From Asterias rubens (taxonomy: Eukaryota), in NCBI RefSeq assembly GCF_902459465.1, contig NC_047068.1, forward strand, positions 18,662,001 through 18,726,000: a DNA stretch of 64,000 nt. The letters are read 5' to 3'. The notes beneath the pieces were generated by a model. That model was given only the letters and a program-made list of their open reading frames with translations. It was not told where the DNA came from and did not search any database. Every line of letters starts with the position of its first letter. The stretch's first letter is position 1. The position numbers were made by a program, and so were the translations under genes. Positions 11,391 to 41,100 of the stretch are shown here, piece by piece.

Positions 11391-13075
11391 TTTAATTTTT
11401 GAAGTTGTCGCACCACCAAGTTAGCGCAAACAAACGCGTATGTGCTTGTTATTTGGAATGGTGCTCGTAGTTACACGATTATGGGTCTATTTAGTTATTA
11501 CTATTGATGAATCACCTCATATTCAAATGAAAAATTAAATGTTTTTCATTACTGTGGTGTTCTACTTGTTCAGGCGTATAAAAAGTAACCCCTATCTAGT
11601 AGTTTCGGCCCAAAATAGGTAAACAATGTGTCTATTCTACATCTTAACTGTACAGTATTGCAATTACAGCCCACTATACACCAATTAGAAAAACAGAGAA
11701 AATCAAACTAAGATAATACCTACAATGAATTTGTTAGTAATAGTATTGATTACAACAAATTGCTGGGTTGTTACACAGATGAAATGCTAGGATGTCTTGA
11801 TGATACTGATTTGTTGTATACGTGTTGCTTTCCTTTGTACCATGCAGCCTTTCAAGATGTCAGTAGGGTTGATTCCCTCCATTCTTGGTTGTAGGAACTT
11901 CTAGCAAGGAAAGATAAAGTAAACAGTTTATATGCAATTGCAGGCAAACAATTAGGTGCAAAATCTCTTGCAGAGGTATCTATGGCCTCCTTCCCAGTGA
12001 TATTAGGGTTGTGTTTTAGTGTGATAAGTGACCAATGTTTACCTAATTAATTTTCAAACCATTACTCATCTTTTTTTGGGGGGAGGGCGGGCGGGGGGTT
12101 CAAAGTAGGTTGTAGTACTCTGTGAGGAAATATGACAAGTACTTTGTATTACCTCCTTTCCATCATCTATTCAGGGGAGGTTTTCGCTTGAATTAAATTT
12201 TAAAATCAATCACCACTCTAAAAATGTATTGCATTGATTGATGCACCTTTTGAAAGCTTGAACTAGCTTGACATATAAAGACAACCAAGGCCTGTCAATT
12301 CAAACAAGACATAAAACTGATTTGACTTCTGTACAAACAAGAGCCACATGACTTCTGTACAATTATTCAAGATCTCAATGGACCGGGTTAAAATTAAAAG
12401 TTTGTTTTCTGGGAATTCACCTTTTACTGGAGAGTGAAGCTCTTGTATCAGAGGCTGGTCTTGGACATCTACTTGGTGACGGGTAGTTGCAATGGAGATC
12501 CCGAAGCCCGACTGCAACACACAAAAAATTCACAATTCGCAACATTTAGATTTGTTACACACATTATCCATCAGTAAAACACCTAGATCAATTTTGTTTC
12601 AATACATTTGTTTTCTATACTTTCGATCACAAATATATGAAGACAAAACATTGAAAACACAAAACGGCAGCGTATTGATTGGCTGTGCTCATGCACATTA
12701 GGAGTATTTTGACTGGTGCAAAATGAAGCAACAGCAACTCAGGTGTATGCCAAATGCTGGGAACAGTTCTCTTAAGGGGTTGCTGATGATAATATGAACT
12801 TTATTGATCAGTCATGCCAGTTAGCTCTCAGAATAAATTATTTATAGCACATGACATAATCATAGTATAAATTAACAAGACTAAGATTTTGTGTCGTTTA
12901 ATTGATGACCACGTTTTGATCATTGTAAATCTCATTGCTGTCCTGTTAGTATCTGTGCACACAGCACAAACGTGTCTATCTGGTTAACGGCCAAGCTATG
13001 GGCTAGTTTTTCGTTATCTCACAAGCACTGCAATGCACAGCCGACAACTGCTAGCAGGTGCCTTTAAAAGATCAC

Positions 13076-13454
13076 TTAAAGACAGTGGACACTATTGGTA
13101 ATTACTAAAAAAATAAATATCAGCATAACACCTCACTTGCTAACAAGTAATGGGGAGAGGTTGATAGTATAAAACATTGTGAGAAACATCTCCCTCTGAA
13201 GTGACGTAGTTTTCAAGAAAGAAGTGATTTTCCACGAATTTGATTTTGAGACCTCAAGTTTAGAATTTGAGGTCTCAAAATCAAAGATATGAGAGCACAC
13301 AACTTCGAGTGACAAGGGTGTTTTTTCTTTCATAGTTATCTCGCAACTCTGACGACCAATCAAGCTCAAATTTTCACAGGTTTGTTATTTTATGCATATG
13401 TTAAGATGAGATGACTGGTCTTTGACAATTACCAATAGTGTCCACTGTCTTTAA
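13076..13454 (-). mobile_element. TTAA-flanked Kolobok/T2-like MITE, family A
   Basis: TTAA-AGACAGTGGACACTATTGGTAATT ... ATAGTGTCCACTGTCT-TTAA; body shared with five other copies. Confidence 0.9.
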
Positions 13455-15687: not shown

Positions 15688-16030
15688 TTAAAGGGAAGGT
15701 ACACTGTTGGTAATTGTCAAAGACCAGTGTTCTCACTTAATGTATCTCAACATATGCATAAAATAACAAACATTTGAAAGTTTGAACTCAATTGGTCATC
15801 GGAGTTGGGAGAAAATGATGAAAGAAAAAACACTCTTGTTGGACGAATTTGTGTACTTTCAGATAGGAATAAAAGACTTCTAGCTAGAAGTCCTTTATTA
15901 ATATTATTTTAGTGAGAAATCACCTCTTTCTCAAAAACTACGCAGAGGGAGTCTCCAATGGTAGTTACCAAGTTATTTTTTAAGTTGATATTTGTTTTGA
16001 GTAATTACCAAACGTGTACCTTCCCTTTAA
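15688..16030 (+). mobile_element. TTAA-flanked MITE, family A body with variant TIR AGGGAAGGTACAC
   Basis: ttaaagggaaggtacac ... gtgtaccttccctttaa. Confidence 0.85.
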
Positions 16031-17679: not shown

Positions 17680-18038
17680 TTAAAGGCAGTGGACACTATT
17701 GGTATAATACTCAAAATAATTATCAGCATAAAACCTCACTTGGTAACGAGTAATGGGGAGAGGTTGATAGTATAAAACATTATGAGAAACGGCTCCCTCT
17801 GAAGTGACGCAGTTTTCCAGAAAGAAGTAATTTTCCACGAATTTGATTTTGAGACCTCAAGTTTAGAATTTGAGGTCTCGAAATCAAGCATCTGGAAGCA
17901 CACAACTTTGTGTGACAAAGGTGTTTTTTTCTTTCACAGTTATCTTGCAACTTCGTGACCAAATGTTCACAGGTTTGTTATTTTATGCATATGATGGGAT
18001 ACACCAAGTGAGAAGACTGGTCTTTGATAATTACCAAA
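17680..18038 (-). mobile_element. Family A MITE, right end truncated
   Basis: ttaaaggcagtggacactattgg; body matches 13076 and 55026; ends at aattaccaaa. Confidence 0.85.
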
Positions 18039-19481: not shown

Positions 19482-20153
19482 TCACCTAATCCTACCGTCC
19501 GATTTAATAAACTTTAACTCTGCTTTAGGATCTGGTGAAAGCGTACTCCATGACTGACTATAGCATGCCTTAAACTGTTTACAATCCGATTGTTTGGTAG
19601 CATTAGCTGGTGAGACGCAGAATCCAAGAACAGACCAGTGCTGACCTACGACCTCATCCACCCATTCATGAAGCCCCGCCCCGAGAAGATGAGCCTTTTT
19701 ATCTGCCTCTTCAATCAGAGGGGTCGAGTCCGTTAACTGGAAGAGTGACTTCATGCTAGAGAAGTCCTTATCAACGTATTTATTATTTGGCACGCCAGAG
19801 TTGAGCCTGACCGCATCGGCCTGGAGGATAGCCTTCCCGCTATTAAAAGCGAGCGGGACGATCAGAAACTCTATTTCAGCGACTACCATCCATTGATACA
19901 ACAGCTTGATGTACCATTTTCCAGGGCGAAGCGGTTTCTTAAATGGGGGGCTGTGATGCGTTTCCTCCTTGTCGTGGTCGACAGTCGTATCAAATGATGC
20001 AGCGACGTGATTGGTTGGATCGATCCATGAGATAGTGACTAGGACCTGCTCACCAGGCTTCCATTTTAGGAAGACGATGGGGGAGTCGGTGGGACCCATG
20101 ATGTTAGCAAAGTTACGCAGCACTCTTTCTTTCAGGTCGTACTCTGTGCCGAC
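19482..20153 (-). CDS. XYLT: XYLT terminal coding exon: [21 protein letters not shown]...[18 protein letters not shown]
   Basis: Acceptor cttacag|GTC; TGA at 19482-19484; typical XYLT C-terminus. Confidence 0.96.
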   Translation of the reverse strand, partial: VGTEYDLKERVLRNFANIMGPTDSPIVFLKWKPGEQVLVTISWIDPTNHVAASFDTTVDHDKEETHHSPPFKKPLRPGKWYIKLLYQWMVVAEIEFLIVPLAFNSGKAILQADAVRLNSGVPNNKYVDKDFSSMKSLFQLTDSTPLIEEADKKAHLLGAGLHEWVDEVVGQHWSVLGFCVSPANATKQSDCKQFKACYSQSWSTLSPDPKAELKFIKSDGRIR

Positions 20154-23100
20154 CTGTAAGACAATGAGACAACAGTCAATGATCTTTACTTGAGTTATGT
20201 CTTAGCAGTAGTTAGTTCCAAACCTAGGCTTTGGCTCCAGCTTCTGTCATCATCATTACTTGTTCAGATATTTCACAACCAACAGCACAACGAGCGCCAT
20301 AAGAGTGTCATGGCCGAGTTGGTTTAGAGCATCAAATTCAAATTCTGGTGGTTAAGTCATTAGAGTGTGGGTTTGATTCTCAGTTGTGACACTCGTGTCC
20401 TTGAGCAAGATACTTTACTATAATGGGAGACTTTCTGGGACGATAGAGGGCAGCAGACTTACCGGGTAAATCCATTGTTCTCAGAATTATGCGCATGTTC
20501 AGAACTACGTAAACAATGGAAATTTACCCGGTATGTCTGCTGCCACCTAGTGTTGGAAAGTCTCCTATTGCTTGAACTCTCCACCCAGGGGTACAAGTGG
20601 GTACCTGCGAGGGTAGAGGTTGATTTTGTGTATGAAAAAGCCTTTGGAGGGCTACGGCAGTTTTGGGCTGTACACTCCCCAGAGAGCTAAGAAAGAATAC
20701 AGGAATGTAATTGGCCCAATTACCAGGGTAAAACGCATTGAGACGTTATGATCATTATGACACTTCTGATCAGCAGAGTGTGGGTTCGAATTCCTAGCCT
20801 TGACACTTGTGTCCTTAAGCAAGACACTTAACCAATGCTTAGTCCTCGGATGGGACGTAAAGCCGTTGGTCCCATGTGTTATTGTGTTTATACGCATGTA
20901 AAAGAACACAGTCCACTTTATATCGAAAACAGAAGGGGGTTCGCCCTGGTATTCCTGGTTGTGGTTGCTTAATGCGCCGTAGCACCTTGTAAACCCTTAC
21001 AAGGTGCTAATAAATAATTGGGTCTCAGAATCCATCACTGCACTAACCTATCTTTCTGAAAGTTTGTACATACTCAGCGCCTTGAGTACCTTATTTGGTA
21101 GATACAGGCGCTATACAAGACTTTTATATTGTTATTGTGAACTGCACTGTATAAGCACTAGTTATAATTATTATATTAGGATGGATAGGAAAAGAGAAGA
21201 AATGTTCAGCTTTAGATGTGAGAGGAAACCACGCAACCAGGTAGGGACTGAAAACCCAATCCACATACAAAGCTCCAGTCTGAGGTGGAGAACGAACTGG
21301 TATCTACAGAGGTGAAATACAGGGAAAGAAACCCTGCACTGAGCCAACCGGAACCCAATTAGTTTTGCCAGGGGTAAAGATCAATGTACAACTTTAATCT
21401 AAAACCTCAAACCAACCTGAAATTTCTGCAGTCTGGTACTCGGCCCAATATAGTTAGTAACTTTATATTCAGACGACTTGGATAACCAGACCTCCATGTT
21501 GTCAGTGGTACCCTTGGGTGTCTGACCTTCCACGGTAACCACTAGACCTCTAAAGTCATCATTGTGCAAGTACATAGTGACTTCTTTAGGGGAAGATTTG
21601 ATGCTGTAGGCACAATGGTCATCATATGGCTGGCCCTTAAAATCAAACAACAAATAAAATATGACCATTAAAGAAAGATTTATAAAAATCTTGGTTTGGT
21701 TAGAAAACAGCAAAAATTACAAATGTGTAAATGAATCTAGACCAGTACTTGAAAGTATGAGCTTTGGCCTACTTAATAAATAGCCACAGGAGTGTTCACA
21801 ATTACATGGTAATATTAACTTGGTGATGCTTCATGTTCATTAAAGGAAATCATGTTGAATCCATTGATCTAGTTATAGATTTGAAAAGGTAGATCAATCA
21901 CATGTGTACATGTGGTATAGGTCATTAATTCTGTAAGGACATGTTTANNNNNNNNNNNNNNNNNNNNNNNNNNNNNNNNNNNNNNNNNNNNNNNNNNNNN
22001 NNNNNNNNNNNNNNNNNNNNNNNNNNNNNNNNNNNNNNNNNNNNNNNNNNNNNNNNNNNNNNNNNNNNNNNNNNNNNNNNNNNNNNNNNNNNNNNNNNNN
22101 NNNNNNNNNNNNNNNNNNNNNNNNNNNNNNNNNNNNNNNNNNNNNNNNNNNNNNNNNNNNNNNNNNNNNNNNNNNNNNNNNNNNNNNNNNNNNNNNNNNN
22201 NNNNNNNNNNNNNNNNNNNNNNNNNNNNNNNNNNNNNNNNNNNNNNNNNNNNNNNNNNNNNNNNNNNNNNNNNNNNNNNNNNNNNNNNNNNNNNNNNNNN
22301 NNNNNNNNNNNNNNNNNNNNNNNNNNNNNNNNNNNNNNNNNNNNNNNNNNNNNNNNNNNNNNNNNNNNNNNNNNNNNNNNNNNNNNNNNNNNNNNNNNNN
22401 NNNNNNNNNNNNNNNNNNNNNNNNNNNNNNNNNNNNNNNNNNNNNNNAATGATGAGTAGACAACTCTCGGGAGAAGCTCTGGGAGGGGGTGTAATGTAAA
22501 CCTGCAAAGAATTGAAACAAGAAATTACCAATAATAGTCATAATTCACTTCCAAGTTTCAGAAATCAATACAATGTTTTGGCTCAGAGACTTGAACTTCA
22601 CTCTGAAGGAAAACAGCACTTTTCCTCGAGGAAAATATAAATTTGTATAATTGGACTGCAAGGGGCACCACAGCAAAAGCACAGGGCACCACGGCAATTG
22701 CTTGTGGGTGTCAAGGGTTTTTTCCAGGTCTGGGCGTTGATACAAAGCTCTAGCTCCATTTGGAAAGTTTGTTTAGAAAGGAGATGGGAAACTGGATGGA
22801 GATTTACAAACTAAGTTTAATTCATTACACATGCTTCAGGAATCCATGTATGTGCACAAGTGTTCTCCTGAATTCTCCTGAATAGTTCTCCAGAACTATT
22901 CCCCATATCTACTTCTGTCAGATTTTGGCTTCAGATTACACAACACACTAGACATGAATCACTTTAAAACTCCTTAGATAAACAAATATTTTAATGAAAT
23001 TTTCTTGCTCAAGGACGGTAGCCAAAGTGAAGGAGTCAAGTGTACAAGAATGCAATGTACATTTACCATGACTGATGTTTATCTTGTAATGGCCAAGTAG

Positions 23101-26100
23101 CCCTTCTTTAGTAAAGACCATTCTCTAATCTATATGAGGAAAATCTAAATTTCTACTCAATCTTTTCATGACCATAACCTCTAAACTTAAACTGTCAATT
23201 TAGACCTTATCATCACTATTTTATCTTTTATTTTTATGAACAATTAAAATATGCCGTGAAGAATGAAAACATGATGGTTTTCATCAAAGAAATTTCAAAA
23301 ACAGTTAAAAAATTTGAAATGTACAGAACAAAATGAGTGTCTCACTTTAAAAAATTAGGTGTTTTGCAAACTGTCAACATTTCCTACTGGTGAAATGTCA
23401 CACAGGGTCAAAGAGATCAACAAACATAAAACATGTGATGTACTTCCTGGTATAAATTCAGTATAAAGGTAAATTCATGATCGCAATTATCACCTGACCC
23501 CTGCATACTGTATGTATGTTTACTTTCATTATTTGGTGCGAGAAAAAGTAAACATTATCTGACAATGGTAACATTATTATAAGCTTTTGGTATGAAACCA
23601 AAGATGCTTTGTAGCTCAAAAGCCTGAGGAAACCTGTAAACATGAACTTAAAGCCATTGGACCCTTTCGGTACAGAAAAAAAAAAAAGTTCACAGATTTA
23701 CAAATAACTTACAGGGTTCAGAAGGTAGTGGTAAAAGACTTCTCTTGAAATTATTCCATGAAATGCTTTACTTTTTGAGAAAACAGTAAAACAATATAAA
23801 TTCTCGTTAGCGAGAATTACGGATTTATTTTAAACACATGTCATGACACGGCGAAACGCGCGGATACAAGGGTGGGTTTTCCCGTTATTTTCTCCCGACT
23901 CCGATGACCGATTGAGCCTAAATTTTCACAGGTTTGTTAGATATAGAAGTTGTGATACACGAAGTGTGGGACTTGGACAACAATACTGTTTACCGAAAGG
24001 GTCCAATGGCTTTAAAGGGTACTTGAACGATATGTGAACCAGAAACAAGGTTAACGCCTACTCTTCCACAATGAGTTTTCTGAGTTGTTTTTACGAGCAC
24101 AATCAAAATCCTGGTAGTGGCTTACAGTCAGTCATGACAGAAGCTATAGACCTTGCTCAAGGACTTAAGACTGACTGGGCATCCAACCCAAACTCTGCTG
24201 ATCAGAAACTTTTGAGACTGACCTAAGGCCCGTTATGAAAAATAATCAAAAATATATATACAAAACTCAAATTTTTATATCCTGGTTCATGTACTGTGCT
24301 ATTATGATTGTATGAGACAATTGTCAATTTTCTGAACCGGATCCAAAAAACGAAATACCACAGCCAACAATTTGTTAGTACAATTGGTATTCTTTCCTTG
24401 TGCATGCCTTTAAAACCTGTCCAAGAAAATATCATGAAAACTAAAATGTGAACACTCACTGTGTTTAACTCTTGAAGATGATTACCTAGAAACTGGCCAC
24501 CTGTTAATTACATAATTATTTTTTAAACAAATTTCACTTTAATAAGTGAGTATGCCAAACTTTATCCTCTAACAGCTTATAAAAATATAATATCATTTCA
24601 TGGCATAAGTGCATGCATTCATGGCGACAGTATCATGATGAATATTCTAGGGATGCGTTGATGCATGACATAATTCTAGTGATATTAAGATACTCGATGA
24701 CTTCGCTTATTCTAAGAATCAGGTACTAAGTGTGTATGCATGGCTCAAATTTAGGGGGAAATCCACCTGACTATAGGTGTTAGTTACTCTTATTCTATCT
24801 CAGGGTATGCTTAAATGTGAAATCCACCTAACTACAGGTCTTAGTTACTCTTATTCTATCTCAGGGTATGCTTAAATGTGAAATCCACCTGACTACAGGT
24901 CTTAGTTACTCTTATTCTATCTCAGGGTATGCTTAAATGTGAAATCCACCTGACTACAGGTCTTAGTTACTCTTATTCTATCTCAGGGTATGCTTAAATG
25001 TGAAATCCACCTGACTACAGGTAGTTACTCTTATTCTATCTCAGGGTATGCTCAAATGTTTTACTGGAGCAGAATTTGTTTAATTAACAAGAGAAATTGT
25101 AATCAAAATGAGGAATAAATTTCTACAGACTTTAATGTTTTTTAATTAACAAGAGAAATTGTAATCAAAATGAGGAATAAATTTCTACAGACTTTAATGT
25201 TTTTATTTGAACAAGCACTATTCCTAAGATAAGACTTGTTTCATAAGACTTGGAGATATTTACCAGACTAAAAGTTAACGTCATCTTGACTTAATTTTAG
25301 TTTGTCAAGATTTACAGAGAACTTTGGTATAATTTTTATTCAGTTCAAAAACACAAACCCACCTAAACTATGATCATTAGTTCACTAGCCCACTGCTAAA
25401 TCCACTGGCTTCAGTCCAGTGGCCTCAGTCCAGTAAATACACGCCTGAAGTATTCATCCAAGCTCTGTATGCACTTTGTGCAGCAACAGACAGGTCAGTA
25501 GGCACTGTGGTTGATCATCAATCAATTATTATTATTTATTATCAACTTTGAATCTCTCTCTCAAGTATTCGTCAATATTGTCTGATTATATGACTTTTTG
25601 TCTGATATCTCGATGATGGGTAGATGATGATTGTTGAATGATGTATACCAATCTACCAGTAACATTATTATCCAAACTCCATTTTTGTATCTAGATTCAG
25701 AAATATTACATTTAGTCCAGTGCAGTGCCTAATGGCAGAAGGGGTTGGCTGGCTCTAGCAGTTTTAGTAATTTTGAAGTACAAGAAAGTTGTATGCAATA
25801 AAGTGGCTCAGATTAAAACAAGATTGCACCACTACTGACATTTGTGTTGAGCTAGAATTATACCCAAAGTATTGTTTTCCAAATTTCTTACCTTCCTACT
25901 TTTTATGAAAAGTAAACCTATCAATGTTCTGATTAGTTTCTTAAAAAATGATTTTCAATTCAGTTGTTTACAGCCTAATGCCTTTTTTCTGGTTAAACTT
26001 TCATTACATCCTCCAGGGCTCATGGTGATTTATTTCAATTGTGATGCAATAAAATATGTGTTTCTTTTTAACTTCCTTAGGCTCTGTTTCTATGGCTTTA

Positions 26101-29100
26101 GCCTTCCAGCTTCATATTCACTCTCTCATTCAAAAGACTACTAATTCTTGACTAGTTTTCTATCAACAACGACATATGCTGAAGCATCATGACTTGCAGT
26201 ATTTGTTCAGTGGATTGAATCAATCTTCAGACAATTGCCAGTCTCTATGCTTGAACAGACCAGAAGTGTTACAGGTGAATAAACAGTGTCAGCCTAAGGG
26301 CATTTTGTTTCACCTGATGATCAATCAGGAATAGACACGACTATGATTTATTAATCTGTTCATTATTTTAATAATCTCTTATTAAGTAAATATAATCTGA
26401 CAACAGTGACAATGTACTTCAGTCAACTAATGATAAGATAATAAATAACGCTCTGATATTAAACAACCTTTATGTCACTCAACACAAAGTGCACACATAA
26501 CATTTATTAGAACATCCTATAAACTTCTATCCTTGACATAGTGACACAAATTTTTTAATATAGGAGTCCATGTCAACATATAGGATGCTTGACTTTGGAC
26601 AAATCTGCAATGCTGTGACTGTTTCCACGGCAGTTACATCTAGCAGGCCTATTTGTGTATTTACGTGGGGAAAAAACCTAATAATTGGTAAACATTAAGT
26701 TGCCAAGGACATTTTTAAAACAAATTATTTTGACAAAAATACACCATTTTTATTTGTAACAGTGTGATGCTGTGATGATAAATGTTGGACAGTGACCGAT
26801 GCTCATGAAACAAAATTTGCCTGAATTTAGCCTGGTTCATACTTCCTGCGAATGCAATGCGATGCGAATTTGCCGTGAATTTGCCATCACAACTCTGTTT
26901 TCGCTGAGATACAATGTATTGGCAAGAGACTTGGGCACAACTCAACCCCTGCAAATTATTCGTTGCGAATTTGTGACGTCAACATTTGTATCGCATTCAC
27001 ATTCACAGGAAGTATGAACCGGGCTTATGTCTGTATCTCTTTTCAGTTCACTTCTTTCCACCTGACTGGCTTCTGTTTTTTAATACACTATGGAGACCGC
27101 TATGTAGTGTGTGTTGTGCTGTTATTTAAAGGAACACGTTGCCTTGGATCGGTCGAGTTGGTCTTTGAAAAGCGTTCTGTAACCGTTTGTTGTAAAATGT
27201 ATATGGTTAGAAAGATATTGTAAAAGTAGAATACAATGATCTACACAAATAGGCCCCCTATGCCTCGAAATTGCGTGGTTTTCTTTTTACCCTGTCGACT
27301 AACAAGGTCGGCCATTTATGGGAGTCAAAAGTTTGACTCCCATAAATGGCCGACCGTGATAGTTCGCGACGTAAAAGGAAAACCGTGCAATTTCGAGTGA
27401 TACTTGTGTGGATCATATATTCTACTTTTAAAACATCTTTCTAACCATATGCATTTTATAACAAACCAATCCAAGGCAACGTGTTCCTTTAATAGCCTTG
27501 GCACATGTTTCGAAAAAACTCTGCTACAACGAAATATTTAGGCCACTATCAATTTTGCTCAGAGCAATAAAAAACGCTGAAATTGCAAAGAACTTTTGAA
27601 AGGACTTCTGTAGTGTGGCGTTTCAAACATAGCTCATAAATTTATCTCTCTCATCAACATTCTTATTCAGTTCAATGAGTGTTTATTTATGCAATGACAC
27701 AGCATTTCCATTGAAGGCAAAATCAAGGTCAAATAGAAATGGTAGGCTAAAGAATGCTTGGACTGGCAACTGGTTTTGGATACCATAAATCATGGGGAAT
27801 ATTAATTTTAGTGCTTTACTGGAGCTTGGGTGATCTATGCTTGAACCTTAAATGATAAATAATAATAATAATAATAATAGTGGCAATTTATAATGCGCCA
27901 TGTCTGTCTAAAAGACACTCCTGGCGCAGGAGAGATGCCGAAGCCAGAATGCAAAGAATATAGTTAAGCACACAAATAAGTTTTCAAATGGGTTTTGAAG
28001 CTGGAATATGTAGTGAGTTGTCGGAGTTTAGGGGGGAGTTCGTTCATTCTAAACAGTCAACCATTCAGTATCAGGATGTGTATAGCACATTCAGACATTC
28101 CAGCATAGTCGTAAGAATGTGATGATTTTTGTTTTTAACAAACTTGTCCCTCTGCAAAACCCCACAGGGAAAATTGTGTTAAATTCATTGACAAATTCAA
28201 GAAAAGTTCCCCTTAAACACCAGCTGATTTCCAAGTACACTGTACCATGGAGGTAAACATGACTGTACCATGTATTTGAATTCTCATATTTTTCACTGTA
28301 CTACTACAAGGACAACTTGTATATAAAAATGACACTTACTGTATTCAATATACAATTTTAATTTGCTGCATAAATGCCTTTGGGTAACAGTCTAGACAGA
28401 GATTTGTTTTGAATTAAGGGGGCGGGGGGGGGGGTTACATAATCATAATGTAATGTTCTGAGCTTGTCAAATCTATTTGCATAGATTCTTAACACAGGAG
28501 AGAGCCAATAATCTAAGTGAAAATAAAATAAAATATATTTTAGGTTTTTTTTCAACAAGTTCCTTCCTCCATGATTCAAGGATTCGGGTACTTTTTCAAA
28601 ATGTCCATAGATTTACATTAAACTTACACAGTTTGAAGATAATGATAGTGGAAAGCTTCCCTTCAAATATTACTTACTGAGGTGCTGTAGTTTTTGAGAA
28701 ATTAGTAAATATTTGTAAATGATTAAAATAATTTTCGTCTCATGAGACGAAAATTATTTTCATTACATTGTTTTACTCATTTCTCAAAAACTACAGCACC
28801 TCAGCACGTAATATTTTCAGGGAAGCTTTCTACTATCATTATCTTCAAACTGTGTAAGTTTAGTGTAAATCTGTAGACATTGTGTTTTTTGTCCTACAAA
28901 AGTTACATAAACCCTTTAAACTGAAAACCTTCCCAGTCTACAGTAGCCTAATTCATAAATGGATTTAAAAATATGATTCAAAGTGCGTGTGGGAATCTTA
29001 CCCTATAACTTTCTAGGCCTTAAAAAAAACAAGTTGTAAATATAGGCCTGCAAATTACAAATTGAATGATTTTGGAGATTGCTTGGCAGTGGTTGCCTAG

Positions 29101-32100
29101 TAACCATAGATACATGACACTGTTGCAATGTCTGTGTGCATATAAGTGTCCATGTGAGAAGATGACAGATCAAACAATGTAAGGATGTGCAAGTTTTTTA
29201 AACATGATTTTTTAAATTAGTTTTCAAGGCAAATATATGTTGCATATATATTATGAAAAAGTCAAATTCTTCTTGAATTCTTGATGAAAAATGCATTATT
29301 GTAAAATATGGTTGAACTTTTGCAGGAGAGATTAAAGTGAAGTACACAAGGATTTGGTTGGCCTTGTTCTTGCACTGCTTACTGTTTAACCCCTGTAAAT
29401 TATTGACGAAGTATTCTTGTATAAATTATGTTTTATAACATCCACATGTAGGCCTATGGTTTTCTTTCTTTTTATTGTTTTTATTTTACATCTTATGTGT
29501 AACAGAATCTGGGTTGGCACAAAAGTTGACCTTTTTAACAAAACATTAAAATCCCTAGGAGGATTACCCACACAAGTTAATGGAAGCCACTCAGTATCAA
29601 GATTATGGTGATGGAAAGAGAAACGTCAGAAGACACTCAGTATCAAGATCATGGTGATGGAAAGAGAAATGTCAGAAGACATCCTCACCAAGGCTTCACA
29701 CAAATTAAATCAATGAGCCAGCATGCTATGCATTCCAGTCACCAAGCCATGCAAGCTACAGCATTGACATTGAACTAGGATGGGTAGAAATGTGAAGAAT
29801 ACACTGTGAGAGATAAGATGATGTTGCAAAAACTGTCATTGCAGATTTGGATTTGATTGAGTGATAAACTTTAATGAACAGAGACATTTAGTCTTATGTA
29901 GCGTCACATGTGACTGAAACTGTCAGGATTATTTTCAGCTATCAATATTTTAATTTAAGTCGGATTTTAAGCTGTGAGAGTGAATAAAATAATTGAAAAT
30001 ATTATTTGTAAGTGAAACCATGTGCAGGAAAAATTTTCTTTGAAGAAGTGATGTTTTTTCCCAAGAAGAATTTATAACGGCAAACTCACTGCATCGATTA
30101 ACTTTTCCTGTATAAACTAAAAACAAAATAATTGAGCTTAGTGATTTTAAATTTGAGGAAACTGTATCCAAATATTCTTACTTTTTTTTAAATACAATGT
30201 TTGCAAAGAGAAGTTCACTCATTCAATCTCAATCACTCTTATACTGTACAATGCAGTTATTTTAGAACTTCTGTCAACATGCCTTCTTGCTATTTTATAT
30301 ACTAGATCCCATTCCTACAGCCAGCGGCATAATTGTTGCTTTATGGGTGAACCAAAATCAATCCATCTTATTGGCAGCGAACCGATCAGCTTTCAAGTGT
30401 TTATCAAATAGTGAATGACTTACAGTTATGTCAGGCCATAGTCAGGCACTCTCAAAACAAGATACAGGAGGTTAAAAGGGTTGTCTTTGAAAATAAGCTT
30501 TTGAAAATCAAAATAGCTTGAATGCCAGAGTTAAAGGTACTTTACATACAAGCAGAAAGTCAAACTAAGCAAGAACAGTGCCTGACTGTAACCTGGGAAA
30601 CACTGAAACTAGTCAATCACACAAAACCCTAAACTTAGTAGAGGACACTTTACTTGATATTGATCAATTCTCTTTTCATCTCAAGACTTTCTTTGTTTCT
30701 TTGTGTTGTTTTGACCTACTTGTCTTCATGTTTCTTTCTTGTAAGGTCAAGGCAGTTTCCTCTCAGTAAAGGACAAAATCTCTACATAAGTGTAAGGGCA
30801 ATTTACATTTGTACAGTAACACTTCAAGGGGCCTCAAGGCAGTGGACCAGGGGCATTGAGACAATTCCTCTGTTGTCCCCATCAAGTATCAAATGGCTTG
30901 ACTCAATTTCAGTATTTGAAGAAAAGAAATTACTTTTCAAAACTCAGTTGGTGGCAAATACTTTAAAGACATTGGGCTTCAAAAGAGAAAGTGAACATGT
31001 ACTTTTAAATGAGGCACATCATCGTACTTTTAACCTACATGTGTATCACGCTTCTCTTTTGACAAACAGTGAAGCGATACAAAGTATACATGCAAGATTT
31101 GTAAAGTAGGTTGATTTGACATCCTATGTACGGAATTTACTAAATGTCAAAGGGGTTGGAACAAATTAGCCTCCCTGTTAATCTAGACACCTAGCACCTG
31201 TCATAATTGTCTAAATATAACTCACCAATCTGACATGAAATATTAAACCGTGACATTTCCACATTGAATCAGTCTTTGCTAAATATACTCAGTCCTTAAA
31301 TGCACTGTTTTCTTGTAAGGATGTGGCAATTTTTTCCCAAGTAAGGACACTATGGAGGAGTCAAAAGAAACTATTATAGGCAACGCACCACTTGGGCAAA
31401 AACCAGAGGGATAGAGGCAATTGTCTACAAAGAGGCCTCTGTATCAGGTAGCTCAATCTCACAAAACACAAGGCTATCGCAGTTTTCACTTTGTAGTGCA
31501 ATTGCACAAAGGGAAAACAAACTCCACAAAAAACAAATAAATAAATAAATGAAAATAATATGGCATTTATAAGCACTCTCAATGTTATAAAAATCCATCT
31601 TTTAAAACTAAATTGAGAAAATTCAATATTCATTCATGATTTTAAAAGTGAGTGGTCTGTTTTGTAATCTGTTAAAGTTGCACGACCCACTTCTCATCAA
31701 ACCTTTTATTTTTTAAGAATTGTTTCTCTGAATGAATTGACAATGCGGCTGATTCGGAACGATTCATTAGTTCATTGGATGGCATGATTGATGGTTTGTG
31801 CTTATTTCTACATCAAGCATAGAGAGAGAGAAGGACCTCTTAGACCAGTGTCAGCCTCAATGGATGATTTCAAGAACATGATGAGCTGGCTCATTATGGC
31901 AGAAAACATAAGACATGAGACAAAATTTGCATGCGCCCCAGACAATGCACAAAATACATACTAGTGTATTTTAATTTTTTTAGATACTAAAAACCTAAAG
32001 TGCATTTTCACTGTATCCTCCGTATGACCCTCCACTACCTCCAGTCAAAACTCAATCATAAATTTTGGAGGAAAACCAACCAAGAACCAAGAACTGTTTT

Positions 32101-35100
32101 TGTAACAATAAAATAGATTAACAAACTACTCACATGCAATTATTGTTTGTATAAAAAAATATGCGTAGTGGCTGTGTATGTGGGATAACGTCAGGATCGA
32201 GACAACAACTTACTTTTAGTTTCCTACCGTTTTGCCATAGTGTACATCACTCACAACTTTTTTGTTAGGCCTAAACACCTCAAATGAAAGCTGAAAAAAA
32301 AACTTTCTTAAAACTACAAAACCAGCCATTTTAAATCTTCATTTTACATTTTAACACATACGTTGTGTGTTTTGTCATAGACTTGGAATGAATGAACTCT
32401 TTGAGAATCAAACGATGTGATTATCAATCATAAGAAGCCACCTCTTCCGCACACCTAAACAACAAACTCAACTCACCAAGTTTTGCTAGAGTTGCTATCA
32501 TAATCCAGATACAGATTCCATACGACGTTTGAACCTCATCCCATTCAATACTAGCCACCATGAAGCGAGAATTGTTACCCAGGGCGCCATGGCAACCTTC
32601 ACCCCCTTCTTCATGCTCTTCAATCCCTCGATCCGCAGCATTTGTGGCTGACACACCAATGATGACAAGGAGCAGAAGTATTAATAGGCGATGCCAATAC
32701 ATCTTCAAGTTCTACTTCAGACTTTCTTCTTGTGGCATAGCGGCAAACGTCTTGGAGAGTTTATATTAAATATTCATCTCCTGAAAGAGAAGGTGTTAAC
32801 TGAGTTAACTACATGTGTAGAGCGTCTTCTCTAGGCCCCTCTCTCAATACTAGATTTTCAGAAACAAATTAGTATATTGCCACCACCTTTTCAGTTGTTA
32901 TGAAATAAATTAATTTCTAGTTTACTCAAATGAGATACTCCTTTTTTTGATTAGTGAAACACTCGTGACAGAATGCGGAAATCTTTTACAAAATTTCAAC
33001 GAAGAAATGCAATTTATATGAAAATTAATATTTTTAATTCACTCCTGAATGGAACACATCTGGTGAGAAAAATATAATCAATAAAGTGTATGAAGCAAGT
33101 AGTGAAGATTAACTCCAACTTTTTTAATGTTGCACAAGAGATTTGTGTTTTTCCCTGAAACTGAAGTGAATGAACTCATGGAGGAAGGATTTACCTTTAT
33201 TGTCCACCTAGTTCAACCAACCATGGTTCAACTCAATATTAAATCAACACACATTGTAATGCAATAGAATCTTCTAGGTGGTTGATCTTACAACAGGAAA
33301 TTCTGAAACTTAGTGGCATGTTTATTTCCCTGAAACCAAGATGCAATATTAAGTCACACAGGCTCTGATCAACCTGTTGTAGTGTTGATATAGAGCCTAG
33401 TTTAGAGAGGTAGAATTACATAATAAGTATGACAGTAAACACTGACAAATTTAAGTATTTCTTCATTGAGCAGTGCTCATGGTATTATATAGAGCAAGGA
33501 CTAAACTTCCCGATTTCAAACTACATGTAGTGTTAAAGTTAATAATGTTTATATAAAACACGTTTTTAACACATCACATTACACTACATTGTATAAGGCT
33601 ACTAAATTATTATACGAGATACGACGACGACCTACTTCCGTGTATCATGGCACTTCAAAGCTAACCACACGTACCACCTGGCTCCACAAGCATGAAAACA
33701 TTCAGTCTCTTTTAGTTGTAGTCCTTTTAGTTACTCCCTTCGCATCCAGTTTCTGCACGTCCTAACTCAAAACACGTCTCTAAGTAGTGTCTTTAAAACC
33801 TTGCCATCAATTGTATTTCATAACATTTCACTGACTGTACAAGATCCACTGAGCCGTGGACATGGTGGATAGAGTATTTAGGAGTAGGAGGTGGTTTACT
33901 GGATGGACCAAAAACTACAATCTGACAATGCAATCATAACTTTTAATTCAAACGGTCATCCATGTCAGAATGTCTTTTTATGTGGCTACTTCTACCTCCA
34001 CCGGTGTCTGGGTCCGGTTTCCGAACACAGTTGTTCTGAAATAGCACGTAACGCAGTCAACGAAAAGACCGAGTGCTGTCAATGATTGGGACGCCGAAGC
34101 AAAGTGTCGATACACGGTACGCTGTGGCCTCTACGCACGACGGACTAGACTATATTACGGCGACAAACGAGGAAATAAAATACAATTGAAAATACCTAAA
34201 TAACAATTATATACACAAACTTACCAAAGTGCTGTGTTGTTTTATTTGCCTCATTAAATAAGTCCCCGGTCCTTGCATGTTTCCATTTCAGTACGCTGTG
34301 TTGAAAATCTGCTTTATCTGTCGGTCGTTTTGTTGTATTTTGTCATCAGCAGATTTACCTGGATTGAGTTATATGGACAATACACCACCAACTGCACGTA
34401 TCACACTGCACTGTCATCAACACCGCCGCCGATACTCTTTTTCTAATTCGCGCCAGCATGCAGTGTGATGAGCCCTCCTCCCCTCGTCGTGCGTGTGTCC
34501 CATACGCGCACAAGTAACAATTTAAAGGAGAAAACGGACCTTTAATTTGTTAACCTTCGTTTTAAGGTTGTATTTAAAGAAAATATATATATATAAAGAA
34601 TGCAACAGTCATATCTTTTTCTAATAAAACGTTTTACTTTCAATTTTTAAATTTAACCAAAACATGAAACATTAGCAAATAAAAAATGATGGTCAGATAT
34701 TACATATTTCCCATTTTTTGTATTATAAAATAATTGGAGCAGCAATAAAGTCTAATGGGACTGGTACTTTAAGTTAAATAAAAAAATAGCTCCACTATCT
34801 GATCTGATCATTTTCAAATTTGTCGGAGATCATGACCAACAAATTAATTTGGACTCATAAAATCAAATTAATTTTTCATAGTTATAATCTGTAGATGGAT
34901 CTACGATGCTGCTGGTAGTATGTAGTAGCTATCCAATGTTATGCACAGTGTATTGCACCTAGCAATATTCTAATAATCCACTTTGTCCCTCCTTGGAGAT
35001 ATGTTTGTGTGCTTGTGGGATTCAAAATAGTCTTCATTGTTGTAAAGCAAAGAACGAATTAAATTAACTAAACCTAAAATAAAATAATTTAAACAAATAA

Positions 35101-38100
35101 AAAACAGGCACAAAATTCTGAGACTTAAAAAAAAAATATTGGTGTCAATAACACAAGCTTTTATTCTCTCAAAAGTGCATTTTAGCACAGGTTTATTGTT
35201 TATCAAATCAATTAACTTAAAATAAATGTGTGACAATTCCACAAATTGCTATTCTGTAAGGACATGTTTAAAGACACTGGACACTTTTAGTAATTGTCAA
35301 AGATAAGTCCTCTCACTCTGTGTATCTCAACACATGCACAAAATAACAAACCTGTGAAAAGTTGAGCTCAACTGGTCCTAGAAGTTGCAAGATAGGAAAA
35401 ACACACTTGTCACACTCTGTCACACGAAGTTGTGTGCTTTCAGATACTTGATTTCCAGACCTCAAATTTAATTCTGAAGGTCTTCAAATCAAATCCAAAT
35501 ATTTTAGCGGAAAATTACTTCTTTCTCAAAAACTATGTTACTTCAGAGGGAGCCGTTTCTCACAATACTGTCAACAGCTCTCTCCATTGCTTGTTACCAA
35601 GTAACTTTGTATGCAAATATTTATTTTGAGTAGTTAACAATAGTGTCCAGTGCCTTTAAGAGCTTAAAGATAAGATATATAGGATCGGTTGGTGGAAACA
35701 CCGCTGATATATTTTTAGTAAATGGTTGAGAAACTGCTGTTAGCCCACAATTTTTGCTCCCAAACTCTGACATACATTCAGTCAAATCTTACAAGAAAGT
35801 ATAAAAACCAAAGATACCTGTTACAAGAAAGGTATAAAAAACCAAAGATACCTGTAACAAGGAAAGTATAATAAACCTGTGCAACTAAGTTACCTGTGCA
35901 ACTAAGTTGATATGAGCAGCCATCAGTCTTATAAATGACTGGTAAACAGTCAATGCTACATCACTAGCTATGGTAGAGCTGTCCTCGTAGTGGTATAAAC
36001 TCTGCCAGTAGGACCGATCTCCCGGGGTACCAACAGGGTAAGAGCCGTACAGCCAAGAGTCTAACTGGTTGATAACAGCTTGGTTTATGATTGGTTCAAA
36101 CTTGCGGGCAAAGTAGGCTGGCCGATTAGGCTGTACAAAAGAGAAAAATAAAGAAAACACATATTTAAAATTTTGTGAAACCTCTATATATTTTTAATTC
36201 AAGGTACTATTGTCTGAAGAATAAAATGATTGAGAATATTTCTAAGTGTCTAGCTGAAAAACACGGCAGAGCAATGGATTGGACCTCTGTACTTAGAAGG
36301 CTTGTAGAACTAATGGAATACAACTTCTGATGCCCCAAGAGTTAATTCAAGGCTTTTTAGAAACAGTATTCACAGTTCTAGAGAAGTATACATACAATAT
36401 AAGTCTATTTTGAAGCCATTAAAACACAGTAATTACTACCCTGTTGGCAAGTCATTGCATCATATGCATGCATGTCAGCTGAATGCCTAAAGTTTCTGCT
36501 ACTTCCGGCACCATGGCAGGCATACATTTATGTGTAACTTGAGCTTGAGCCCAATCCGAGGTTTGGCAAAATAAAGGCTCAGGTAAGGACTGAAAACCCG
36601 GGCCAAATGCAAAGCTCCGATCTGAGCTTGGATTTGAATAGGGGTCGAAAGAGGTGAAGAAGGAAAAGAAACCACTGAGCCAACCTTAGCGTTAGCCTGA
36701 ACATATGGCATCTCCGAGGCTCTTGAATCACCTTTGACCTCACATCATTTCACATGACCTTCCTGGTTCTGGAGATTTGCAGTTAAATCTGACATACATG
36801 TGAATACATATAAAGCCAATACCTGTCCTTATCCGGGGACAGGGGATCAGTCTAAGCCAACCTAAACTCCCGGCTGATCCCCATCTTGTTGATTGTTTAC
36901 CTTGGTTTTATATAAATCTTCTGGTTTGAAGTCATTCGGAGAGCACCCACACCAGTCCACAATGTGCTTGTATTGACACTGACATCCAAGCTTGCGTTTC
37001 CAGTTTGTCACCCGAAGATTGTTATCCACAAAGGTCTTACATAGTTCACTGTTCTCAAGAACTGTATGAAAAAATGACTGCAATAAAACAATATAACAAG
37101 ATATTTTTTATTATAAAATACTCAAAGGTTTGTAAGATGTACAACTTACGAGAAAGACTCTACTATGGTTTAAACCTTCACACCATTTGTACCACAGGTC
37201 CTTTTGGTTAGTTAGCAAACTGCAAATAGCAATACTTTCTCTGAGTACAACTTTGGTCAAATTAGGAGAAACCTACTCATTTTAACCACATCTAAATGCA
37301 ATCATTAACGCTGAGAAATAATGCTTTTCATCATAAAAATTCAGACCTGGAAGGCCACACGGAGGCCCCCACCTCTGCTGCCTTTGTCTTGTACTTGTCG
37401 CCCCAAAATTTCCCAAAGATTGAAAAGATTTCCAAATGAAAGAGCCCTTTTCAAAATAAAAATGGCATTGTCCTCCAAAAGATGAAATTCCAGGCCTGAA
37501 ACCAGGACATCATAAATCCACTATGGCCTAAACATTTAAGACACAATCGGTAGCTACACATAAAAAAGCACCTTCACAATACCACTATAGGATTAGGATT
37601 GTGTACAGCAGAACATCATGTTATACCATCAGCAGATTAAGTCAAAACACACATGTTTCTAGTACTAGGTTACACTTAAATAAAATGAACATGTACACTG
37701 AACTTGACCCTGAGTTTATCCAAATCCAATCACTGAAGATAAATAGCAAGAGTCCAATGGGATTATTGGTGGGTTTCATCAAGGTCAGATTTTATATAGC
37801 AGCAGGTATTAATTTTGATGTAGATTTACTTTTCACCTTCGGAGTCCCTATGGGAATGTATTTTTGTGTACAAAATAAATTACTATTTAATGTTTGAGTC
37901 AGTAAACAATTTTGTCCAAAGGCACGTGAATGTATCCAGAGTTATAAGACCGCACAGTTTGAAGTTAATTCTGTTTTAGAGGAAGTACAAGTAAGTGAAC
38001 CACTTATCTACTGTCACGTTGGCAGATTTTCCAATGGCTTGTGATTTTTTTAAGGTACCTGAAACCTACCAAATTCTTTAGGTTCAAGGCCCGGTCACAC

Positions 38101-41100
38101 AGGCCCCAATAATGAGAACCAAAACGAGAACGATAAATGAACACCCTCGATCGGTTGAATTGCTCCACGCAGAATACGCCCACGCTTATTCAACCAATGG
38201 AGGGCATGCATTTTTATCGTTTTCTTTTTCGTTCTCGTTATTGGGGCCTGTGTGACCAGGCCTTAAGTCCAGAGTTCCACAGTGCTATGTAATTGGGCTC
38301 TATCTTGCCATACCCACATAAAGAGATTGTCACATTGTATTTAAAGTGACTTCCCAACGAGCACCAACAGTCCTCACTTCATTGTTTACAAAGCAGGCAG
38401 TTTATCAAATTTGAATGATCACTCAACTAATTTAAGTCGACGTAGAGTTTAACACACTGAAGTGTACCACAAGATGTACCTCACCCTATCACAACAAGTT
38501 ATTGTACGTGGTTAGTATGTGTGCCTACTACTGCCTTGTCCAAATACCATGTCATGGTTTGTAATGTATAAATAAATCAGCTGGAAATATACCTGTTGCC
38601 CCCTTTGCAAGCTTTGGATACAATTATATCACTTATAATAATACCCTTTGGGAATGCCTACAAAACAGGCCTTGCTTATTATGTGGACCACTAGCAGGAG
38701 AAAGGAATGCCTGCCTTGGAATTTCAAAGCTTAGACAAGACAAACTGTAGCACTGGCATATCTTAAAGGAACACATTGCCTTGGATCGTTCGAGTCTTTG
38801 AAAAGCAAAATCGTTTGTTTTATAATGCATATGCTGAAAGATATTTTAAAAGTAGAATATAATGATCCACTAAAGTATAACTCGAAATTGCGTGGTTTTC
38901 CTTTGACCTCGTCGACAAACACGGTCAGCCATTTATGGGAGTCACATTTTGACCCCCGTAAATGGCCGACCGTATTAGTTCGCAAAGTAAAAGGAAAACC
39001 ACGCAATTTCGAGGCAAATGTGTGTGGATCATTGTATTCTACTCTTTAAACATCTTTTTAACCATATGCATTTTATAACAAACGGTTACAAACGCTTTTC
39101 AAAGATCAACTTGACCGATCCAAGGCAACGTGTTCCTTTAAAGAAAAGATTCTGAGATTAAATTTAATTTTGGGGATACACTCTTCTTTTTTTTTTTCAA
39201 TAGATAGGGTCCTTTTGAAAGTGACTGACTCCTGTGAAGTATTATAATTTACAGTATAGTAATATGGTTTCACCGTACACCGATTGTGTGATAATTGTGT
39301 GATTTTTCTCTCGAGTAGTGCAGGAGTAAAACCTGCTGGCATACTACTCATGTGGGATTAAAAACTGTGACCCCCACATTGTGACCCCCACATTTTATTG
39401 CAGGGCCAAATGTCGTAGCTCTGCTTATACCATAAGCAAACAATTGCCCCTTACCAAAACTGGGAATTCCGAGCTTACGTCAAGCATTTTCACTGCTTAG
39501 CAGTAAATTGTTGCTTAGGTGCGTACGTACTCTATGTTACTAGGCAATCTAAAGTGGGGAACAGTGATCGTAAGCGCAGAATTAGGGGATAAGCAGAGCC
39601 ATGAAATAGGACCCACATATCTTAATTCACACATTTTCTAGCAGGTATCTCAACCACTAGCCCAACAATCGTGCCCTCAAACATCTAGAACAAATTACAG
39701 ACACAAAAAAGGGCACAACTAAGTGTATGCACACATTGGTCATCAAATTGGATCCCACTTTTAAATGCACTCTATATAAGAGTGAACAAAATATGCCGAA
39801 TTGTTCAAATACCTCAGCAGGAAGAAGTGTGTATTTGTACATGAGCTTCAGACCAGTCAGTAGCTCATTGGTTGACATAATCAAGTACTCTACAAACTGT
39901 CGATTGATAACGATCCAATCCGATCCGCCGTCCAGCGTGATTCCTAGAGGGAGTTGACGATCGCCCAGACGCCACATGTGTGTGTCGCACTCGAAGAATG
40001 TCTTATCTAATCCCTGCTTTTTAATGAATCTGGCGGGAGGTAGAAATCAAGAAAACAGCGTTAGAAACTGTAGGATTTGAAACTTTGCATGATGTAAATT
40101 AGTACAGCTTATGCTGTGTCCGAGTTGGCGGCTACAGCTAGGGCTACAGCTAGATTTCCACATCATCATGCGTTGAGGTATAGGACATTTTTGGCAACAC
40201 CCTTAGCAACAGCCGTAGCCGTTGCTGCAGACGCAAATTCGGATAAAGCCCAAGAGAGGTTGGCGGTACACCACTAGTGAATATCTTTTTGAGTAGTACA
40301 TAAGCAGCAACAAGTAACAGAGTCCAGCATTCTCCTGGAGATGGTCAGAGCATACTGATTGAATTGTTGAGTCATTAACCATTGGTTAGAACCCAGTATA
40401 ACTCAAAGATATTCTCATTGTGTAATCGCAAACATGTCTTAGCAATTTTTGTCTGGTTTCTGAAACCAACAAAATGGCAATCAATACCTTTTGAAAAACA
40501 TATCTGTGGACAACTCAGATGAAAACCTGATTGAGTTATTTATATAGGTCATACAAGCATAAGGTCAGAGGTTAAATGAAGGTCAATATTAAAAGCAGAT
40601 AGTCAGAAACAGGAAAGGATAGAGCATACATGTAATGTAGGGTGATACCCAGGGAGATGTAGTGCACTCAGGAGGGTCATGGTCACACATGTTATCCCAA
40701 TTGGGTATGAACGGTTTTAAAAAACGGTGTTAATCCAGGGTTAGGTCAGATGCATGGGGTGAGGAGTCAGTGCCACCAAGATATCCCAAATGGGGTATGA
40801 AAAGGGGGACTAGTGGTCAGTGCCACCAAGATATCCCAAATGGGGTTTGAAAAGGGGGACTAGTGGTTAGTGCCACCAAGATATCCCAAATGGGGTATGA
40901 AAAGGGGGACTAGTGGTCAGTGCCACAAAGATATCCCAAATGGGGTATGAAAAGGGGGACTAGTGGTCAGTGCCACCAAGATATCCCAAATGGGGTATGA
41001 AAGGGGGGACTAGTTGGGGGAAAAGTCCTGTTGTGATACGGTTTGAACCGGGGTCCACTAAGGTGAAAAGCAGAGAAAGAAACCACTAAGCAAACCAGAC

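What the first reader, a model, noticed from the sequence alone, without database searches (positions are those of the whole stretch)
21928..35270. 5' half of an NHE gene nested on the same strand in an XYLT intron, bracketed by an exact 20-bp direct repeat
XYLT exons 35894-36130 and 21417-21635 join in frame, yet the intron contains an NHE promoter-like region, a signal-peptide exon and the start of the next exon, all on the minus strand. The last 20 bases before the gap (attctgtaaggacatgttta, 21928-21947) recur exactly at 35251-35270, immediately before a MITE. Removing the block between the copies leaves an ordinary intron of about 935 bp. Three explanations fit: (a) a real insertion or rearrangement of >12.8 kb of NHE locus with a 20-bp duplication, possibly heterozygous; (b) a true same-strand nested gene whose remaining exons are hidden in an under-sized gap; (c) a chimeric contig or haplotype misjoin. 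Same-strand nesting is rare and would imply splicing and polyadenylation conflict or XYLT-NHE chimeric transcripts.
Basis: partly seen in the sequence, partly recalled or inferred. Interest (0 to 1): 0.78.

Follow-up and report, generated by a model that had tools for sequence, protein, structure and literature searches.

The report
Misjoined NHE fragment in XYLT intron
The apparent sodium/proton-exchanger gene start sitting inside a xylosyltransferase intron is almost certainly an assembly error: in every public data set I could examine, the exchanger's upstream DNA runs on into different sequence at exactly the point where the assembly joins it to the intron.

Summary
The 20-mer is exact at 21928-21947, which is the last letters before the only gap, and again at 35251-35270. 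The two XYLT exons are consecutive. A 5' NHE fragment lies between them on the same strand.

The join of the NHE block to the XYLT intron at 35250|35251 is not supported by any outside data:
- Public contigs from a genomic run of the best-matching sample, a marine metagenome and an RNA run follow NHE-upstream DNA to about 35256 (the metagenome contig to 35243). They then continue for 184-577 letters that are unlike the window.
- An ORF from two metagenome assemblies crosses the same point and departs from the window at 35251.
- NHE and XYLT depths are equal, at single-copy level, so there is no extra NHE copy.
- The NHE block carries about 2 one-letter consensus errors per kb against every public contig.
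- The orthologous intron in the starfish Patiria miniata is 1.86 kb and shows no NHE match.

Removing 21948-35270 gives a 935-bp intron.

It is not a nested gene and not an insertion with a target-site duplication. I did not read across 21947, because the operators bar looking up gap letters. This scan had not noted the feature before. Interest is low.

The parts
21417..21635 (-). XYLT exon B (Xylo_C domain), on the contig left of the gap
   Evidence: Matches Pfam Xylo_C profile positions 60-129 and residues 725-797 of P. miniata XYLT.
21636..21927 (-). Genuine XYLT intron sequence on the left contig
   Evidence: Unique in the window and contiguous with exon B.
21928..21947 (.). 20-mer copy 1: the last 20 letters of the left contig, overlapping 35251-35270
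   Evidence: Exact match with 0 expected by chance; it ends at the gap edge.
21948..22447 (.). 500-N scaffold gap between two contig ends that belong to different loci. Its letters were not looked up.
   Evidence: It is the only N run in the window. The left side is XYLT intron and the right side is the interior of an NHE coding exon.
22448..22501 (-). First 54 nt of the second NHE coding exon, cut off by the contig end. The splice phase and the PESCLLII frame disagree.
   Evidence: The AG acceptor is at 22502-22503. The exon 1 donor phase is read. The frame conflict is my inference.
22502..32476 (-). NHE intron, about 10 kb
   Evidence: It lies between the donor at 32476-32475 and the acceptor at 22503-22502. 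RNA contig X22 record 17 runs on 1248 nt beyond 32475.
32477..32780 (-). NHE first coding exon: start codon at 32702-32700, a signal-peptide-like N-terminus and the first membrane segment
   Evidence: Residues 47-75 align to NHE3 7x2u_A residues 3-31, E 0.05. RNA contig X22 record 17 covers 32475-32779.
32781..34224 (-). NHE 5' intron (GT-AG)
   Evidence: It is skipped in RNA contig X22 record 17. The donor and acceptor are read.
34225..34422 (-). NHE 5'UTR exon; the transcript contig ends at 34422
   Evidence: X22 record 17 covers 34224-34422 and is joined to 32779.
34423..35250 (-). NHE upstream or promoter region, the last part of the foreign block
   Evidence: It is matched by X1 record 2, X3 records 29-30 and X22 record 18, and by P0001.
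35250..35256 (.). False junction. The window leaves the real NHE-upstream sequence at 35251. Positions 35252-35256 (TTCTG) are shared by both sequences.
   Evidence: The contigs stop matching at 35256 and run on 577 letters unlike the window. P0001 reads ...NNDQK|SNLW where the window reads ...MSLQN|SNLW.
35251..35270 (.). 20-mer copy 2: genuine XYLT intron, the same locus as 21928-21947
35268..35659 (.). TTAA-flanked MITE with terminal inverted repeats AGRCACTGGACAC, very high copy number
   Evidence: Other copies lie at 60314-60695, 55026-55384, 17680-18038 and 13075-13454. Summed depth is 10^4-10^5 times single copy.
35660..35893 (-). XYLT intron right of the MITE
   Evidence: X1 record 8 covers 35632-36400 with 0 differences.
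35894..36130 (-). XYLT exon A
   Evidence: Human XYLT1 6ej7, E 2e-21. Xylo_C profile positions 1-52. P. miniata residues 645-724.

Best explanation
This is an assembly artefact. The stretch 22448-35250 is a fragment of the NHE locus: its upstream region, 5'UTR exon, first coding exon, a roughly 10-kb intron and 54 nt of the next exon. It comes from elsewhere in the genome and has been fused in the contig right of the gap to genuine XYLT intron sequence that starts at 35251.

The left contig, which carries XYLT exon B, really continues from 21947 into 35271. Its last 20 letters are the same piece of DNA as 35251-35270, so the '20-bp direct repeat' is a contig overlap and not a duplication. The scaffolder correctly placed the two XYLT-bearing contigs side by side with a conventional 500-N spacer, and that trapped the foreign 12.8-kb overhang between them. 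The true intron is about 935 bp.

What is shown:
- The NHE side of the junction is contradicted by outside data.
- The XYLT exons are consecutive.
- There is no extra NHE copy.

What is inferred:
- 21947 runs straight into 35271.
- The overhang came from a chimeric long read or a similar contig-level misjoin. It stayed poorly polished because reads map to the true NHE locus elsewhere in the assembly.
For: 1. **Read-derived contigs.**
   - X1 record 2 (3775 nt, depth 159.5) matches 32064-35256 and then has 577 more letters unlike the window.
   - RNA-run contig X22 record 18 matches 35143-35256 and then also has 577 unlike letters.
   - Metagenome contig X3 record 30 matches 34902-35243 and then has 184 unlike letters.
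   - An unbranched k-mer contig passing through the junction means X1 holds no competing path into the 20-mer.
2. **Metagenome ORF.** The 104-aa ORF P0001, from two ENA metagenome contigs, is identical to the window over 34973-35250. It then reads MWAEDQNNDQK where the window gives [11 protein letters not shown], so it departs at 35251, exactly where the 20-mer starts.
3. **The repeat.** The 20-mer is exact and ends exactly at a contig end.
4. **Depth.** In X1 the NHE block has depth 159-169 and the XYLT side 187. An added NHE copy would give about 1.5 times.
5. **Exons.** The XYLT exons on either side are consecutive.
6. **Synteny.** The orthologous P. miniata intron is 1861 bp with no gap, and NHE exon 1 finds no match in the 67-kb locus.
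7. **Consensus quality.** Eight 1-nt indels in 30072-33864, plus one at 35216, are shared by all public contigs against the window. None are seen in 35632-36400.
8. **Transcript.** The NHE transcript uses its own 5'UTR exon, with no splice from XYLT.
Against: - I did not see a read or contig that joins 21947 to 35271.
- Contigs show presence, not absence. X1 is probably the assembled individual, but that is not proven. A private junction in the assembled animal is therefore not strictly excluded.
- A 20-letter overlap that begins exactly at the chimeric point is not something I can derive from a specific assembler's behaviour.
- The difference in error rate between the NHE block and the XYLT side rests on only 769 nt of the XYLT side and is not significant on its own.
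- NHE exon 1 is poorly conserved, so its absence from the P. miniata locus is weak evidence.
Confidence: 0.88

Rival explanations
1. A real, possibly heterozygous, insertion of more than 12.8 kb of NHE locus into the XYLT intron of the sequenced animal, flanked by a 20-bp target-site duplication. The assembler broke at the point where the two haplotypes diverge.
For: The exact 20-bp direct repeat brackets the block. A contig break at the end of the first copy is also what a heterozygous bubble would give. The 5-nt TTCTG shared at 35252-35256 could be repair microhomology.
Against: X1's NHE-upstream contig runs unbranched through the junction into other sequence. NHE depth is 0.85-0.9 times the XYLT depth, not 1.5 times. 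None of five outside data sets has the junction.
Confidence: 0.07
2. A true same-strand nested NHE gene whose remaining exons lie in an under-sized gap.
For: The fragment is on the same strand and has real, expressed NHE exons with canonical splice sites. XYLT has another 14.8-kb intron, so a long intron would not be odd in itself.
Against: Nesting requires NHE-upstream DNA to be continuous with the XYLT intron, and in all outside data it is not. The left contig shows the 20-mer directly continuous with the intron down to exon B, which leaves no room unless the 20-mer is duplicated. The orthologous P. miniata intron is 1.86 kb and holds no NHE match.
Confidence: 0.02
3. Still an artefact (a sub-case of the best explanation, so its odds lie inside the 0.88), but made at the scaffolding or gap-closing stage. 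A separate small NHE contig was interleaved between two XYLT contigs that overlap by 20 letters, and it was then butt-joined to the right-hand one without N.
For: The left contig end and the XYLT part of the right contig overlap by exactly 20 letters, and that XYLT part starts exactly at the false junction. This looks more like contig ends than like a random chimeric-read breakpoint.
Against: There is no N at 35250|35251, and scaffolders normally mark joins with N. I have no information on the pipeline used.
Confidence: 0.25

Closest known systems
Chimeric contigs or misjoins in long-read, Hi-C-scaffolded assemblies
   Same: The junction is unsupported by independent reads. Reads from one side continue elsewhere. 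The foreign piece sits at a contig end next to a fixed-size N spacer. The foreign piece has poor consensus quality. Removing it restores an ordinary gene structure.
   Different: The exact 20-letter overlap between the neighbouring contig's end and the sequence just past the false junction is unusually tidy. I cannot tie it to a particular program.
Insertions or segmental duplications with target-site duplication
   Same: A direct repeat brackets a large block.
   Different: There is no extra copy by depth. The right-hand junction is absent from outside data. The left-hand junction is hidden in a gap. At 20 bp the repeat would sit at the upper end of known duplications (my own knowledge: L1-type 7-20 bp), yet the block contains introns and a promoter, so it is not a retrocopy.
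Same-strand nested (host-intron) genes of animals
   Same: A gene start lies inside another gene's intron on the same strand in the assembly.
   Different: Only the first two exons and 54 nt of a third are present, and physical continuity with the host intron fails.

Membership tests
Assembly chimera / misjoin | The junction is absent from independent sequence data, and reads from one side continue into other sequence. | tested here: met
   X1, X3 and X22 contigs run on for 184-577 unlike letters past 35243-35256. P0001 departs from the window at 35251.
Assembly chimera / misjoin | Reads join the two genuine flanks directly (21947 to 35271). | not tested
   The only support is the exact 20-letter overlap.
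Assembly chimera / misjoin | Removing the block gives a structure consistent with orthologues. | tested here: met
   The exons are consecutive. The P. miniata intron is 1861 bp with no NHE match. The collapsed intron is 935 bp, of which about 390 bp is a MITE.
Insertion with target-site duplication | A direct repeat flanks the inserted block. | tested here: met
   The exact 20-mer is at 21928-21947 and 35251-35270.
Insertion with target-site duplication | The insert-to-target junctions are present in genomic reads. | tested here: not met
   No contig carries the 35250|35251 junction, and the NHE-upstream contig passes it unbranched. The left junction lies in the gap.
Insertion with target-site duplication | An extra copy of the inserted DNA shows up in read depth. 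| tested here: not met
   X1 depth is 159-169 on the NHE block and 187 on the XYLT side.
Same-strand nested gene | The whole inner gene lies within one host intron, continuous with it on both sides. | tested here: not met
   Only the 5' exons are present, and the upstream side is not continuous with the intron in outside data.
Xylosyltransferase (GT14 Branch + Xylo_C) | A Xylo_C domain and similarity to XYLT1 across collinear exons. | tested here: met
   Pfam PF12529 on both exons. Human XYLT1 6ej7, E 2e-21. Eight collinear exons match P. miniata XYLT residues 362-1020.
NHE / SLC9A sodium-proton exchanger | A Na_H_Exchanger membrane domain. | tested here: inconclusive
   Only about 93 codons are present. 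There is no Pfam hit. Residues 47-75 align to NHE3 7x2u residues 3-31 at E 0.05, and the PESCLLII motif is in the exon remnant. This is enough to name the gene, not to test the domain.

The most novel reading that the evidence does not exclude
The sequenced animal alone carries a private heterozygous insertion of the NHE promoter and first exons into the XYLT intron, with a 20-bp duplication. That would place an active same-strand promoter and splice donors inside XYLT and could yield NHE-XYLT fusion transcripts.
Probability: 0.05. Interest if true: 0.45.

Novelty: not a real feature. Interest (0 to 1): 0.07.

Why it matters
The value is practical. The stretch 22448-35250 should be flagged as misplaced in this assembly. 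Left as it is, gene predictors may report a truncated NHE gene, a 14-kb XYLT intron or a false nested pair, and synteny or structural-variant scans may count a false rearrangement.

It also gives a useful rule for this scan. An exact short repeat with one copy ending at a gap edge is first of all a contig overlap, and it can be tested cheaply by asking whether public contigs pass through the other copy.

Tried and rejected
**Look-ups that gave nothing**
- An exact look-up of the ORF at 34277-34465 for contigs reaching the junction found nothing.
- The NHE exon 1 ORF contigs L001-L004 stop at 33864 and do not reach the junction. I used them only for error counting.
- P0001's two contigs have no DNA available. 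Only the protein's N-terminus could be used.
- To view the XYLT side of 35251 from the right, the exon A peptide search found no candidate, and the ORF at 35722-35868 is not on record.
- To measure error rates on the XYLT contigs, the ORFs at 39660-39977 and 19485-20099 are not on record.
- The contig of a related species carrying P0011 has no DNA.
- Exon B alone finds nothing in the PDB. Isoform X2 of the P. miniata protein is not indexed, but isoform X1 worked.

**Ideas rejected**
- The 20-mer is not part of the MITE. Family copies begin at 35267-35268.
- The true NHE continuation does not lie elsewhere in the window. No six-frame match to P0001's N-terminus was found.

**Other**
- A search of earlier scan notes for NHE or misjoin notes was blank.
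Full report
**Observation**

The 20-mer ATTCTGTAAGGACATGTTTA occurs exactly twice in the 64-kb window, at 21928-21947 and 35251-35270. None is expected by chance, and there are no further copies even with two mismatches allowed. The first copy is the last 20 letters before the window's only N run, 21948-22447, which is exactly 500 N. The second copy is followed by a MITE. Other family members in the window (60314-60695, 55026-55384, 17680-18038, 13075-13454) begin to align at 35267-35268 and are TTAA-flanked with AGRCACTGGACAC termini. The 20-mer is therefore unique flanking DNA, apart from its last 3-4 letters.

**The host gene**

The minus strand carries eight collinear exons of a xylosyltransferase: 63606-63430, 48605-48402, 45912-45823, 40031-39807, 37092-36895, 36136-35894, 21638-21393 and 20159-19485. 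They match residues 362-1020 of Patiria miniata xylosyltransferase 1-like.

- Exon 35894-36130 matches human XYLT1 (6ej7, E 2e-21), Pfam Xylo_C profile positions 1-52 and P. miniata residues 645-724.
- Exon 21417-21635 matches Xylo_C positions 60-129 and P. miniata residues 725-797.

The two exons are therefore consecutive, and nothing coding is missing between them.

**The block between them**

On the same strand lies the start of an NHE gene.

- The first coding exon is 32477-32780. It has an ATG at 32702 and a hydrophobic N-terminus, and residues 47-75 align to residues 3-31 of human NHE3 chain 7x2u_A at E 0.05.
- A 1753-nt contig from an RNA run joins 34422-34224 to 32779-32475 and then continues for 1248 nt outside the laid stretch. 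The gene therefore also has a 5'UTR exon at 34225-34422, with GT-AG borders. The acceptor at 32780 is fed by the NHE gene's own upstream exon and not by XYLT exon 35894.
- The next exon starts at 22501 and is cut off after 54 nt by the contig end at 22448.
- The donor phase of the coding exon leads into the frame LHYTPSQS, while the family motif PESCLLII is in another frame. I infer a one-letter error in the C-run there.

**The gap, tested first**

The left edge of the gap is XYLT intron. The right edge is the interior of a coding exon of another gene. The two sides are not continuous and not in frame. The 500 N are a conventional spacer between two contig ends.

**The decisive junction is 35250|35251, which is not a gap**

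I laid Logan contigs of four public runs on 31200-36400.

- X1 is the best holder (share 0.93) and probably the assembled sample. Its record 2 (3775 nt, depth 159.5) matches 32064-35256 and then has 577 further letters that match nothing in the stretch.
- Orientation check: the other end of record 2 sits at 32064, where X1 record 1, X3 record 25 and X3 record 26 also end or begin. The unmatched letters therefore lie beyond 35256.
- RNA-run contig X22 record 18 matches 35143-35256 and again has 577 unmatched letters.
- Metagenome contig X3 record 30 matches 34902-35243 and has 184 unmatched letters.

An independent route gives the same answer. A protein search with the ORF at 34973-35215 found P0001, a 104-aa ORF from two ENA metagenome contigs. 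It is identical to the window through [12 protein letters not shown]... but upstream reads MWAEDQNNDQK, where the window in that frame reads [11 protein letters not shown]. Codon by codon, the real sequence differs from the window at 35251, agrees by chance or microhomology at 35252-35256 (TTCTG), and is unrelated from 35257 on. The window leaves genuine NHE-upstream DNA exactly where the 20-mer begins.

**Copy number**

In X1 the NHE block has word depth 159-169 and the XYLT side 187. An additional inserted NHE copy would give about 1.5 times. An unbranched k-mer contig through the junction also means X1 holds no competing path into the 20-mer at usable depth.

**Consensus quality**

Four independent public contigs over 30072-33864 all show the same eight 1-nt indels against the window. 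The read-derived contigs add one more at 35216. None is seen in 35632-36400, although that is only 769 nt. This fits a poorly supported, poorly polished piece. A chimeric long-read overhang whose short reads map to the true NHE locus would behave this way. That mechanism is my inference.

**Synteny**

In P. miniata (GCA_015706575.1, locus L005) the orthologous intron is 59326-61186, which is 1861 bp without N. The NHE exon 1 peptide finds nothing in the 67-kb locus. Exon 1 is poorly conserved, so the absence is weak evidence, but the intron is simply too short to hold such a gene.

**Conclusion**

The stretch 22448-35250 is foreign to this place. The left contig's last 20 letters and 35251-35270 are one and the same piece of XYLT intron. 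The true intron is 312 + 623 = 935 bp, of which about 390 bp is MITE.

- Option (b), a nested gene, fails because the upstream side is not continuous with the intron.
- Option (a), a real insertion with a 20-bp duplication, survives only as a private allele of the assembled animal, and only if X1 is a different animal. I give it about 0.07.
- Whether the error arose from a chimeric read at contig level or at scaffolding or gap closing I cannot tell. The tidy 20-letter overlap hints at contig ends.

**What I did not do**

I did not fetch or read any public contig of this species that crosses 21947. Direct continuity from 21947 to 35271 therefore remains inferred.

Noticed in passing
window 35268-35659; also 60314-60695, 55026-55384, 17680-18038, 13075-13454, 15701-15940, 52446-52550: A MITE family of about 390 bp, TTAA-flanked, with terminal inverted repeats AGRCACTGGACAC. 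Copies are 76-82% alike. Summed contig depth over it is 10^4-10^5 times that of single-copy DNA in all four runs, so it is one of the most abundant repeats of this genome.
   Followed up: partly
window 31628, 31703, 31975, 32024, 32348, 32751, 32983, 33152, 35216: One-letter indels, mostly missing T in short T runs, in the window relative to every public contig examined. These are consensus errors of the assembly, concentrated in the misplaced block.
   Followed up: yes
window 22448-22501 (-): In the NHE exon remnant the splice phase gives LHYTPSQS, while the conserved PESCLLII motif is in another frame. This is probably a 1-nt error in the CCCCC run close to the contig end.
   Followed up: partly
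window 35143-35256 and beyond (true NHE locus): A 692-nt contig from an RNA run (depth 70) covers NHE-upstream DNA and continues 577 nt into the sequence missing from the window. It is either an upstream transcript at the true locus or DNA carried over in the library.
   Followed up: no
window 27185-27466 and 38813-39083: A repeat of about 270 bp that matches its own reverse complement (80-84%), a foldback element. It gives look-alike ORFs on both strands (KGKPRNFE / SHKWPTV peptides).
   Followed up: partly
window 35933-36095 (XYLT exon A), run X15: About 20 substitutions within 160 nt in one X15 contig, at depth 77.6 of 118.8. Organism D's run holds a second, diverged XYLT exon beside the matching one. 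It could be an allele, a paralogue or another species in the sample.
   Followed up: no
proteins P0004 (3596 aa) and P0005 (1405 aa): Long database proteins with 11 and 7 separate stretches matching part of the Xylo_C exon B peptide (E 1.6e-15 and 2.8e-10). Unexplained.
   Followed up: no
ENA contig carrying P0011 (10,688 nt, no DNA available): In a relative with 84% identity in the last exon, two Xylo_C ORFs of 143 and 248 aa lie only 38 nt apart. Either the introns are absent there or the contig is transcript-derived.
   Followed up: no
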